A stretch of DNA of 64,000 bases, taken from contig NC_135254.1 in NCBI RefSeq assembly GCF_964204865.1, positions 23,622,001-23,686,000 on the forward strand, read 5' to 3'. The DNA is from Styela clava (Eukaryota). Made by a program: the position numbers and the translations under genes. Below are positions 40,602 to 64,000 of this stretch, piece after piece. Each line of letters opens with the position of its first letter. Position 1 is the first letter of the stretch. The notes below the pieces were generated by a model. That model did not search any database and was not told the origin of the DNA. It worked only from the letters and a program-made list of their open reading frames with translations.

Positions 40602-43600
40602 TCACAAAGAAGATACAACTTTCTCATTATCAGATACTTTCGTACCACTATGAGCATAGGCACCATTCACTTTCCCACCGTTTTCAGGAACTTTGGCTTT
40701 ACTTTTCTCCACTGCTCTGCGACTTTTAATAAACCAAAATAACACAAGCAGTATTAGTATAGTACCCAAGCTTAAGCACACACTGAACATTACATATATA
40801 GCAGTGTCTGCCTCCACTGGAGTCAAATTTAGACCAAGTCCTTCTCCTATGGGTGGGACCCCCAATTCTTCACAATTTTCTGGCGGTGGAGCTTCAGTTG
40901 GTGGTTTTTCTGTTGGTGGATTCATGGATTCGGTGGTGGCAGATGCAGTCGGAAGAGATGGCGAATCTGTTAAAATTAGAGGGATTCAAATAAAAGTGAA
41001 ATAAAGACGAAAACAATAACTGTATGATCAAAATAGTTATGTACCCTGTGGAAACATAGGCACAACATCATTCCAAAGCGCGTTTTTTTCGGCATTCAAG
41101 TTCTTTTGTCTTCTCAAACTTCTCCCCAAGTCTAATTCGATATAATTTGTTGAGTCTGGCAAATAATGTCTCCATTTTGTGGTAGAGTAGGCTGTGTTTG
41201 GATCGCTAGAAGTTGTGAATGAATCAGGTAAAATCAAAACTTCAGTTTACTTTGGCAAAAGTAATATCGTAAGGTGCTGCCATGTGCGAATAATTTAGAT
41301 TTGATCGAAAGTTATGCTGTGAGCAGCATAATATATCTGTACCAACCACTTATCTATTTTGCACCAGGAAATGCTACTATTGAGCAATTTTAGAATGATA
41401 CATTGCAAACTTTTGCTGTCTACAATGCCAGATGTAAGCAGTTAGACTACAACTTAAAAATAAACAATCTGCATAATGGCAAAGTTGACTAACCTACAAC
41501 TTACAATACATAATAGTACTCATACACATGGTAAAAATAATCTTTACCCAGACCACGCAAAATTTGTCCATCGTGATATAATAGCTTGGCTAAATTTTCT
41601 GTCTTCGTCTGAATAAATATCTGGTGATGTGATCGGAATTCCAAATTCATAAATTACATCATCACCATGGCAGCCACCAATCCAAGATGTTTCCATTTTC
41701 AAGTTTCTTGTCAAAAGGTATTGATATACCTTTTTGCTTGTTGTCCTGTGTGTTTGAAAACAAGGCAATGATTGGAGCCTTGGGAGATTAAACCGGGTTG
41801 GAATATAGACAGAATTTGAATTTTATGCACTTCGTAAAAGTGATTTGTCATGTTTTATACATTTCTACTTCTCCGTATAGTATTCACTTTACGTAAATGT
41901 TTTAAACTTGTACAGTGTTATCGTGAATGAATGTTTGCCAATTTTCTTTATATTGCTGAACTGCAAGTCATAAATCTTGCATTACTTCTTCACAATATTA
42001 CCTTTATATCGTTTCAAGTAAGCAATTTTAATTATAAAAATGGTGTTTTCACCAGTGTTTTCTCATGATGTAGAACTTAGTTACATGTAATATCTTGCCT
42101 TGCTATTTCAGCAATTGCTTTTGAAGATGAGACTTTAAACATAAAATCGCTGTAATATTCCACAGCAGATTGTTGCAACAGTTCTTCATTATTTGGGTCT
42201 TGCCATGGTGTATAAGAATGCAAAAGAGTTGCATAAGTTTCTTGCGACCATACATCAAAAGAATTTCCATATAAAAATCTGTGCGTATCTGAAACTGCAG
42301 TGCCAAGAACACCATCATTTTGCTGCACTATAGATATATTGGGATATGCAGCCTGAAAAATATGGTGAGATTGTCAATTAGCATAACAGTAATTATAAAA
42401 AATGTGAACTTTTATGGGCGCAAGTTCTACCATGCAATCCATTCAAATCCAAAAATCGGCATGAATTGTAACATAAATTATAATTTCTGCAGACATGATT
42501 ACGGTATGTAAAAAGCAATACCCAAACGAACCTTCGAACATATTTTTTATGATAATAACAATTTGTCAACATTGATTACCACATAATTTGAAGTATCATA
42601 ATCTCACCTTCAAATAATAATAAAACTCATGACTTGTTGTCCCAGCCAGATAGTCAAAGTCAGAGCTGTTAGCAAACAACTGCTGTAAGTCCACTACAGG
42701 AATCAAATCATCATCTTTTCTCATTCTCCACATTCCCCACAAGTTGAAGTCGTGATCACTGCTACCATCAATTTGAATCAAAGGTACTGCATTCATAATA
42801 TTTACAGCATCTGTTGTTTGTAAACATTGGAGGATATCTTCACTCAAATCAACGTTTCCACATCCAACGGATGCTGCTACGTCAATGGTAGTTTGGCCAC
42901 ATGAATTGCTGTGGTCACAAAATGCCCAAGGTGAAAATGCAGATCCACTTTGACTTATAACTCTTTTCACATATGATGAAGTAGATGGAAGAGATCCCTG
43001 TTAAATAGTAACTGGAATAAAGTTAAAGCTGATACAAGAATAATTGGGTCTGATATTTCAAACAAGAAACGCTGCTGAAATTGAGTAAAAACCTACAGAT
43101 CACACCAGAATTTTCAAAATGGCTTGCAAGCAATTAAGGCTACATGCGTATGCAAGTAATTATTTTTGAAAACATATAAATAGTTGAAAATTTTTTTAAG
43201 AAAATTTAGGGATAAGACCAAGTATCCTTTACTATGTCACAATTTATCATGTTTCAAATCTTTCGAGGGTTCCGTTTTCATCTAATCCTGACTAAAGTAG
43301 CGGATGCCATTATAATGAAATCAATATAACAGCCTTGGTGCATAGTGCATATATGCATATGATGGTATTATTGTCAATTTATGTAAATTACTAGTGTACC
43401 ACAGAAGATTATTATTTTCTGTTTCGTTAATTTCAGTATTTTGTTGGGAGGTCATTTTATGTGATGTTACCAGTCCGCCAGGTCATAACGGTTGGAAACC
43501 AGTGCACCAGTTCAGTGTTCCCCAACCCATGCGACAGCAAGCTGAGTCGTCAGATAATCTTATTGGATCACTTGTTTTTTCAACAAAAACTTGAAAGTTA

Positions 43601-64000: not shown

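What the first reader, a model, noticed from the sequence alone, without database searches (positions are those of the whole stretch)
40602..64000. Giant membrane-anchored polyprotein of at least four tandem carboxylesterase domains
Seen: what looks like a cluster of separate esterase genes splices into one ORF. Each domain ends without a stop in a phase-0 donor and joins the next without a Met or signal peptide (GEGLD|DSYEF at 61398/61153, SAIE|IPEV at 54743/54649, NTVQ|VTTT at 46438/45963). Only one TM segment and one stop exist, at the very end. Established: type-B carboxylesterases/cholinesterases normally have a single catalytic domain, whereas tandem-domain membrane hydrolases are typical of brush-border glycosidases such as lactase-phlorizin hydrolase and sucrase-isomaltase. 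Inference: an esterase analogue of such surface digestive enzymes.
Basis: partly seen in the sequence, partly recalled or inferred. Interest (0 to 1): 0.85.

Follow-up and report, generated by a model that had tools for sequence, protein, structure and literature searches.

The report
Four-domain membrane-anchored esterase gene
This sea squirt (Styela clava) gene really does join four carboxylesterase domains, three apparently active and one inactive, into one 2,343-residue membrane-anchored protein; NCBI already holds the model, unnamed, and I found no paper on such proteins.

Summary
The window is Styela clava chromosome piece C5. On the minus strand a 35-exon gene runs from an ATG with a signal peptide at 66654, which is 2.65 kb past the window's end, to a stop at 40602.

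It encodes 2,343 residues: a signal peptide, exactly four full COesterase domains, a Pro/Thr/Ser-rich stalk, one transmembrane helix and a 42-residue tail.

The exon model I built is identical to an NCBI protein on the same chromosome (P0216). Transcript contigs from 4 runs (3 studies) splice 54743 to 54649, so the B/C joint is shown directly. The A/B and C/D joints rest on indirect evidence.

Domains A to C keep Ser-Asp/Glu-His triads. Domain D has Gly in place of the catalytic Ser, plus a loop insertion.

Two paralogues on chromosome C1, about 47% identical, keep the same four domains and the same intron phases. Sharks (3 domains), starfish (2) and Lingula (3) have predicted proteins of the same plan: active domain(s), a dead domain next to the membrane, then a TM helix.

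The brush-border digestive role is untested. Cleavage into separate enzymes ("polyprotein") has no support. The sequence is already known as a model. The architecture is a new variant of a known enzyme family.

The parts
63723..64000 (-). Domain A (aa 1-566), part inside the window's last bases. Exon 3 runs 64327-63723. Exons 1-2, with the ATG at 66654 and the signal peptide MLQPYFIIVCVLV..., lie beyond the window at 66654-66251 and 66051-65948 in extended coordinates (locus L009).
   Evidence: The PF00135 match at C5:23688226-23688570 covers profile positions 6-123.
61398..63292 (-). Domain A, exons 4-6 (63292-63067, 62723-62561, 61593-61398). The domain ends ...GEGEGLD at a phase-0 GTAAGT donor. 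Nucleophile elbow GESSG, acid Asp, His present.
54743..61153 (-). Domain B (aa 567-1137), exons 7-18, starting DSYEF... with no Met or signal peptide. Triad GESAG / Glu / His. Two GC-AG introns follow exons 7 and 17.
   Evidence: Every intron between exons 8 and 18 is seen as a joint in RNA contigs. The exon 7/8 joint is inferred from a loose end that maps to 61002-61031.
54650..54742 (-). B/C inter-domain intron: 93 nt, phase 0, with an in-frame stop 10 codons in.
   Evidence: Spliced out in contigs of runs X1, X2, X3 and X6, which come from 3 studies. Sequence and stop.
46438..54649 (-). Domain C (aa 1138-1665), exons 19-27, starting IPEV... Elbow GQSTG, acid Asp, His present. Intron 24 (50592-47636) holds a transposase remnant on the + strand.
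41045..45963 (-). Domain D (aa 1666 to about 2215), exons 28-34, starting VTTT... The elbow is GQGSG (catalytic Ser replaced by Gly). A 15-residue insertion sits in the HGGG oxyanion loop. Glu and His are retained.
   Evidence: Exon 30 matches PF00135 at 112 bits.
40602..40966 (-). Last exon: Pro/Thr/Ser-rich stalk, the single TM helix (core [19 protein letters not shown], aa 2281-2299), a KSRR stop-transfer motif, a 42-residue tail ending -VSSL, and the stop codon at 40602-40604.
   Evidence: The exon is conserved at 55-65% in both C1 paralogues.

Best explanation
This is one real gene of Styela clava. It encodes a 2,343-residue type I membrane glycoprotein.

Shown: an N-terminal signal peptide, four tandem type-B carboxylesterase domains joined by short linkers across phase-0 introns, a Pro/Thr/Ser-rich stalk, one transmembrane helix and a short tail. 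Domains A, B and C keep complete Ser-Asp/Glu-His triads and the HGGG oxyanion motif. Domain D has lost the nucleophile (Ser to Gly).

Inferred: the signal peptide sends the chain into the ER and the C-terminal helix anchors it, so all four domains face outside the cell or into a lumen. The protein then works as a surface-tethered multi-esterase with three active sites. The dead domain D serves as a spacer, a dimerising unit or a binding module next to the membrane. The tail ends in S-x-L, which fits the class I PDZ-ligand pattern as I recall it, so it may dock on a scaffold protein.

The four domains are old duplicates, only 29-36% identical to each other. The four-domain unit was later copied as a whole to give three paralogous genes.
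For: - Gene model: 35 exons, GT-AG or GC-AG at every intron, and a product identical to NCBI protein P0216.
- RNA: contigs from 4 runs (3 studies) splice the B/C joint exactly at 54743/54649, together with ten more introns. Single contigs of 5,604 nt (X1) and 4,471 nt (X2) run on beyond both ends of the laid stretch. Under the spliced model X1 would reach from exon 6 (domain A) to 115 nt past the stop. X2 and X3 would end within 30 nt of the exon 30/31 boundary.
- Domain content: 4 COesterase stretches, 1598 bits. Triads and the dead elbow. One TM-like segment and no internal signal peptide, unlike the mis-fused Lineus model.
- No ATG or signal peptide is hidden in the inter-domain introns.
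- Conservation: both paralogous loci on C1 are colinear over all four domains. The NCBI protein of one (P0001) is about 47% identical and threads onto its locus with the same intron phases, including the three phase-0 domain boundaries.
- Trees: each domain groups with its counterpart across paralogues at 100*.
- Same plan elsewhere: shark, starfish and Lingula models have a signal peptide, active domain(s), a domain with Gly at the Ser position, then a TM helix and tail.
Against: - Only one of the three inter-domain joints was seen directly in RNA. The A/B and C/D joints rest on the NCBI model, splice signals, contig-length arithmetic and conservation.
- Contigs cannot prove that a single full-length mRNA or protein exists.
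- No enzymatic, proteomic or localisation data exist. Intact triads do not prove activity.
- Tissue of expression is unknown.
- The PDZ-ligand reading rests on three C-terminal residues.
Confidence: 0.8

Rival explanations
1. It is a non-enzymatic adhesion or receptor protein of the cholinesterase-like adhesion molecule type (neuroligin, neurotactin, gliotactin). The esterase folds serve as binding modules and the intact triads are relics.
For: - Domain D has the Gly-for-Ser elbow (GQGSG), as does the insect neuroligin in the alignment (GHGTG).
- The stalk, TM helix and hydrophobic C-terminal S-x-L resemble neuroligin's layout.
- Among solved structures, neuroligins are the best matches even for an exon of domain A, and they top the list for exon 30 of domain D.
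- NCBI names a starfish member 'neuroligin-4, X-linked-like'.
Against: - Complete triads and oxyanion motifs are kept in three domains in both Styela paralogues examined. Those paralogues have diverged to about 47% identity, and the nucleophile Ser is kept in the third paralogue too. This argues for selection on catalysis.
- In the tree, neuroligins form their own clade (99*) apart from all four Styela domains and from the dead domains of sharks and starfish.
Confidence: 0.12
2. It is a true polyprotein: a precursor cut between domains after synthesis, releasing separate soluble esterases, with only domain D staying on the membrane.
For: From memory, brush-border multi-domain hydrolases (LPH, sucrase-isomaltase) are proteolytically processed. 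The linkers here are short and probably exposed.
Against: No furin-type R-x-[KR]-R site lies in any linker. The two such motifs, at aa 996 and 1690, lie inside domains. Nothing here tests cleavage by other proteases.
Confidence: 0.05
3. These are four separate tandem esterase genes. The single ORF comes from read-through or chimeric transcripts and from an over-merged automatic gene model.
For: Over-merged tandem esterase models do exist. Lineus XP_064631732.1 carries a signal peptide at the start of each of its four domains. In most other lineages the domains within one model are each other's closest relatives.
Against: - Domains B, C and D have no start codon or signal peptide, and none lies in the introns.
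- Domains A, B and C have no stop before their donor sites.
- The B/C intron is only 93 nt and is spliced in 4 of 4 RNA runs.
- The four domains are only 29-36% identical, and each groups with its counterpart in the paralogues.
- The paralogue P0001 keeps the same intron phases.
Confidence: 0.03

Closest known systems
Type-B carboxylesterase/lipase family (Pfam PF00135), especially bile-salt-activated lipase (CEL) and liver carboxylesterases
   Same: Each of the four domains is a full-length COesterase fold. Domains A and C use a Ser-Asp-His triad, which from memory is also CEL's. CEL is the best solved match to exon 31 of domain D.
   Different: Characterised members have one domain and are secreted or retained in the ER. 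This protein has four domains in one chain plus a C-terminal membrane anchor, and one of the domains is dead.
Neuroligins and other cholinesterase-like adhesion molecules
   Same: A type I membrane protein with a non-catalytic cholinesterase-like domain (Gly at the Ser position), a Pro/Thr/Ser-rich stalk, one TM helix and a short tail with a hydrophobic C-terminal S/T-x-hydrophobic ending. Neuroligins are the top solved matches for two exons.
   Different: Three further domains with intact triads lie upstream. Neuroligins form a separate clade in the domain tree. Neurexin-binding features were not examined.
Lactase-phlorizin hydrolase and other brush-border multi-domain hydrolases (comparison from memory)
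   Same: The layout is the same: signal peptide, four tandem homologous hydrolase domains of which not all are catalytic, a C-terminal TM anchor and a short cytoplasmic tail.
   Different: The fold is unrelated (alpha/beta-hydrolase esterase, not a glycoside hydrolase). There is no evidence of gut expression or of pro-region cleavage.
Predicted multi-domain membrane esterases of sharks (e.g. Scyliorhinus scyTo_0000838, 1,702 aa), starfish (e.g. Patiria LOC119726772) and Lingula LOC106179609; all uncharacterised
   Same: The same plan: signal peptide, active domain(s), a membrane-proximal domain with Gly at the Ser position, a TM helix and a short tail. Styela d3 groups with starfish d1 (96-98*). 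Styela d2 groups with shark d2 (95*). A clade of all the dead domains is not rejected (AU p 0.60).
   Different: They have 2 or 3 domains rather than 4. The loop insertion in domain D is found only in Styela. Deep nodes are unresolved once neuroligins are added.
ER-type tandem carboxylesterase models (zebrafish ces2b, 1,611 aa; amphioxus; frogs)
   Same: Several COesterase domains sit in one predicted chain, and only the first has a signal peptide.
   Different: They end in HSEL, KDEL or HAEL ER-retention signals and have no TM helix. All their domains keep GESAG. Their domains are lineage-specific recent duplicates.

Membership tests
Type-B carboxylesterase/lipase (PF00135) | Profile match above the curated cut-off over the full domain length | tested here: met
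   P0216 has 4 stretches totalling 1597.9 bits against a 27-bit cut-off. My own HMM envelopes are 1-576, 570-1138, 1130-1675 and 1662-2304.
Type-B carboxylesterase/lipase (PF00135) | Catalytic triad: Ser in G-x-S-x-G, an acid (Glu or Asp) and His | tested here: met
   Domain A: GESSG / Asp / His. Domain B: GESAG / Glu / His. Domain C: GQSTG / Asp / His. Met for three of the four domains.
Type-B carboxylesterase/lipase (PF00135) | Catalytic Ser in the fourth, membrane-proximal domain | tested here: not met
   Domain D reads GQGSG, with Gly at the Ser position. It also has a 15-residue insertion in the HGGG loop. Both features are present in paralogue C1a, and the GQGSG elbow is present in C1b as well.
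Type-B carboxylesterase/lipase (PF00135) | Measured esterase activity | not testable with these tools
   Needs recombinant protein or activity-based probes.
Neuroligin / cholinesterase-like adhesion molecules | Non-catalytic ChE-like ectodomain, stalk, single TM helix and cytoplasmic tail | tested here: met
   Domain D plus the stalk, the TM helix (aa 2281-2299) and a 42-residue tail.
Neuroligin / cholinesterase-like adhesion molecules | Single ChE-like domain architecture | tested here: not met
   There are four domains, three with intact triads.
Neuroligin / cholinesterase-like adhesion molecules | Groups with neuroligins in a phylogeny | tested here: not met
   Insect and amphioxus neuroligins form their own clade (99*) that excludes all the Styela domains. 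Deep nodes are weak, so distant kinship is not excluded.
Brush-border tandem-domain hydrolases (LPH type) | Several homologous hydrolase domains in one membrane-anchored chain | tested here: met
Brush-border tandem-domain hydrolases (LPH type) | Glycoside-hydrolase catalytic fold | tested here: not met
   The only Pfam families matched are alpha/beta-hydrolase ones. This is an analogy of layout, not membership.
Brush-border tandem-domain hydrolases (LPH type) | Expression on the apical membrane of gut epithelium | not testable with these tools
   The runs are coded and carry no tissue labels.

The most novel reading that the evidence does not exclude
The gene belongs to an old, undescribed animal family of membrane-tethered multi-esterases. 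Members are built from one or more active carboxylesterase domains stacked on a catalytically dead, membrane-proximal domain, then a TM helix and a tail with a hydrophobic C-terminal ending. The family would be present in tunicates, cartilaginous fish, echinoderms and brachiopods and lost from most bony vertebrates. It would act as a surface (apical or digestive) ecto-esterase, with the dead domain as a dimerising or spacing pedestal.
Probability: 0.3. Interest if true: 0.7.

Novelty: new variant of a known kind. Interest (0 to 1): 0.5.

Why it matters
Carboxylesterases and cholinesterases are usually described as single-domain enzymes, and their non-catalytic relatives (neuroligins and the like) as single-domain adhesion proteins. 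This gene puts three apparently active esterase domains and one dead domain in one membrane-anchored chain, and it is transcribed. The design is conserved across three paralogues, and sharks, starfish and a brachiopod have predicted proteins of the same plan.

If the family is real and active, it is an unstudied class of cell-surface ester hydrolases. It would also show catalytic loss next to the membrane within a protein that is otherwise enzymatic.

There is a practical warning for annotation too. Multi-domain esterase models in databases mix genuine fusions, like this one, with mis-merged tandem genes, like the Lineus model. Internal signal peptides tell the two apart.

Tried and rejected
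- Exact threading of P0157 onto the window failed. P0157 is an allelic version with 14 differences. A scored threading worked, and the result equals P0216.
- My first junction search used the paralogue P0001 as guide. It misplaced exons 13-15 and chose spurious GC donors at the B/C joint. RNA joints and the P0157 guide corrected this.
- The apparent RNA joint at 60006/61002 is an aligner over-extension of 9 nt with one mismatch. The real intron is GC-AG at 60993/59997.
- I looked for RNA-derived proteins that cross the other joints. The Logan and JGI hits P0005, P0032, P0072 and P0073 are single-domain proteins or fragments, two with their own signal peptides (P0072, P0073), so they say nothing about the joints.
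- The idea that the dead domain is a neuroligin was tested and not supported by the tree, although neuroligin-like proteins are its nearest single-domain hits.
- X1's contig would end 115 nt past the stop. The only poly(A) signal (ATTAAA) lies at +126, so the end is only roughly as expected.
- Four literature searches for tandem or multiple carboxylesterase domains found nothing. A zebrafish activity-profiling paper lists ces2b entries of 29 and 105 kDa without comment on architecture (PMC9786740).
- Rfam found nothing at the heavily transcribed intronic repeat.
- One Pfam call exceeded the residue limit and was re-sent smaller.
- No structure or complex prediction was run. No binding claim is made.
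Searches used single exons by reference or database proteins returned by the tools. The joined model existed only inside the sandbox, for comparison.

Full report
**What and where.** The window is G000:C5:23622001-23686000 of a 377-Mb eukaryotic assembly. The best relative of a window exon is an NCBI protein of Styela clava on a contig of 32,746,820 bases, which is the length of this assembly's C1. The genome is therefore the leathery sea squirt. The window has no N runs.

**Checking the observation.**
- Six-frame reading shows some 35 short open frames on the minus strand between 40.6 and 64 kb. Those I tested match Pfam COesterase at successive profile positions, four times over.
- A PF00135 scan of the whole genome showed that the first domain continues beyond the window's end (C5:23685762-23686331 and 23688226-23688570). 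It also showed that no further esterase exon lies upstream.
- I fetched the flank (L009, L014). At extended coordinate 66654 there is an ATG followed by a typical signal peptide, MLQPYFIIVCVLVKHISFSLA|ANEV.
- A search with the paralogue P0001 returned a 2,343-residue protein with its source masked, P0157. Threading it on the DNA gives 35 exons from 66654 to 40602. Introns are GT-AG, with three GC-AG exceptions.
- The joined product, built only inside the sandbox, is 99.4% identical to P0157. It is identical to P0216, an NCBI protein on a contig of 24,897,793 bases, which is the length of C5.
All are phase 0.

**RNA evidence.**
- One search for runs found five presumed RNA runs that hold 21-27% of the words of 54300-60300, about the exon share, and a sixth that holds 14%. 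DNA runs hold 94-97%.
- I laid four of them (three studies) on 54400-60399. In all four, contigs join 54743 to 54649 and skip 93 nt with GT..AG ends. Ten further introns are skipped at the model's boundaries. The B/C joint is therefore shown directly. These runs must be cDNA.
- The contigs are long: 5,604 nt in X1 and 4,471 nt in X2. They run on beyond both ends of the stretch.
- X2's overhang beyond exon 8 maps to exon 7 at 61002-61031.
- If the contigs follow the model, X1 spans from 155 nt inside exon 6 (domain A) to 115 nt past the stop. X2 and X3 would end 29 and 1 nt into exon 31. That is what an assembly-graph break at an exon junction would give.
- This supports the A/B and C/D joints only indirectly. 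The single read-laying run could not cover them.

- No in-frame ATG in any of the three inter-domain introns reads open into the next exon.
- Reading through a retained intron meets a stop after 11, 10 and 32 codons.
- The first Met of domains B, C and D lies 36, 85 and 28 residues inside the fold.
- A hydropathy scan finds a single TM-like segment, at the C-terminus. By contrast, a Lineus four-domain model shows a signal-peptide-like segment at the start of every domain and is clearly mis-merged.

**Anatomy of the protein.**
- Domain limits are A 1-566, B 567-1137, C 1138-1665 and D 1666 to about 2215. Pairwise identity between domains is 29-36%.
- Nucleophile elbows are GESSG (A), GESAG (B), GQSTG (C) and GQGSG (D).
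- The acid residue is Asp (A), Glu (B), Asp (C) and Glu (D). His is present in all four.
- The HGGG oxyanion motif is intact in A to C. In D it is split by a 15-residue insertion.
- After D come a Pro/Thr/Ser-rich stretch, the helix core [23 protein letters not shown], and a 42-residue tail ending VSSL.
- There are 19 N-glycosylation sequons.
- No furin-type site lies in a linker.
- I infer a type I surface glycoprotein with three potentially active esterase sites and a dead domain beside the membrane.

**Conservation.**
- Two further loci on C1 (about 25.67-25.70 Mb on the minus strand, 25.75-25.78 Mb on the plus strand) are colinear with the window gene over all four domains, the linker exons and the TM exon.
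- Their NCBI models are 2,349 and 2,351 residues, and P0001 is about 47% identical to the window protein.
- P0001 threads on its locus with 36 exons. Every intron phase is the same, including the three phase-0 domain boundaries, plus one extra intron.
- In domain trees each Styela domain groups with its counterpart in the paralogues at 100*. The four-domain unit therefore predates the gene duplications, and its frame has been kept open since.

**Relatives elsewhere.**
- An all-against-library search with one exon found many proteins with 2 to 6 matched stretches.
- *ER-type models.* The zebrafish ces2b, amphioxus and frog models end in HSEL, KDEL or HAEL. All their elbows are GESAG, and their domains are recent lineage-specific duplicates.
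- *Membrane-anchored models.* A second group shares the Styela plan:
  - three shark proteins of about 1,700 residues, with elbows GQSAG, GESAG and then GHGAG (the third not matched in the Stegostoma model), followed by a TM helix and a tail ending HTKL or HTKF;
  - starfish two-domain proteins, with the second domain GHGSG or GHGAG, then a TM helix;
  - a Lingula three-domain protein.
- *Domain trees.* Styela d3 groups with starfish d1 (96-98*). Styela d2 groups with shark d2 (95*, unresolved). The dead domains of shark, starfish and Lingula group together (97*).
- Forcing Styela d4 into that dead-domain clade gives a slightly better likelihood, AU p 0.60. I named the group after seeing a tree and the branches are long, so this shows only that a clade is not rejected.
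- *Neuroligins.* They are the nearest single-domain hits to the starfish dead domain and top two exon searches against solved structures. In the tree they form their own clade. I take the Gly-for-Ser elbow to be shared by convergence or by very deep kinship, not as grounds for membership.

**Function.** Nothing here measures activity or location. Conserved triads in three domains across diverged paralogues make an enzyme the most likely reading. The signal peptide and C-terminal anchor put it on a surface or lumenal membrane. A digestive role is a guess. 'Polyprotein' is not supported.

**Novelty.** The sequence is already in NCBI as an unnamed model. Four literature searches found no paper on tandem carboxylesterase domains. 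I rate it a new variant of a known enzyme family.

**Earlier notes and method.** I checked that independently. Searches used single exons by reference or proteins that the tools returned.

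Noticed in passing
window 48424-49757 (+), inside intron 24 of the esterase gene: Open frames on the opposite strand match Pfam DUF4371 (E 2e-8), a domain I recall from hAT-type transposases. This is probably a decayed transposon, and it accounts for the gene's longest intron (2,957 nt).
   Followed up: partly
window 56200-56420, intron 14: A short interspersed repeat has enormous depth in all four RNA runs (about 5,600-15,600, against about 10 for the gene). 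Many loose-ended contigs start or stop here. Copies lie in both orientations at the two C1 paralogue loci (tblastx). There is no Rfam match.
   Followed up: partly
window 57550 and 57760 (around exon 12): In three runs, contigs align up to 57550 or from 57760 and then continue for 255 or more letters. Those letters match nothing between window 1 and 82000 of the extended sequence. This could be an alternative exon, a chimeric contig or a repeat. Unexplained.
   Followed up: partly
window 60992, 55154 and 42098 (donor sites after exons 7, 17 and 32): Three of the 34 introns use GC-AG (GCAAGT or GCAAGA). One GC-AG intron (after exon 17) is seen spliced in RNA contigs; the one after exon 7 is supported only by a mapped loose end.
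   Followed up: yes
G000:C1:25672000-25701500 (-) and C1:25750900-25781300 (+); loci L010-L013 and L015-L020: Two further four-domain esterase genes (NCBI LOC120335102/LOC120335093 and LOC120335133) lie about 50 kb apart in divergent orientation. They are 85% identical to each other. P0001 is 47% identical to the window gene.
   Followed up: partly
P0002 (Lineus longissimus XP_064631732.1): This 2,475-residue 'four-domain' model repeats the same signal peptide (IQCVVLIFITL...) at residues 3, 629, 1248 and 1867, and its domains are almost identical. It is very likely four tandem genes merged by the annotation pipeline.
   Followed up: yes
P0170, P0162, P0167, P0161, P0174 (zebrafish ces2b and relatives, amphioxus, frog): These are three- or four-domain carboxylesterase models with one signal peptide and a C-terminal HSEL, KDEL or HAEL signal. 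They suggest tandem-domain esterases resident in the ER. A zebrafish activity-profiling paper lists a 105-kDa ces2b fragment entry (PMC9786740).
   Followed up: partly
C-termini of P0216, P0001, P0156, P0163-P0165 and P0218: The tails end in S/T-x-hydrophobic: VSSL, VSAL, FSAL, HTKL, HTKF, LTKM. This fits the class I PDZ-ligand pattern as I recall it. Starfish members end in hydrophobic-x-Phe or in other residues.
   Followed up: no
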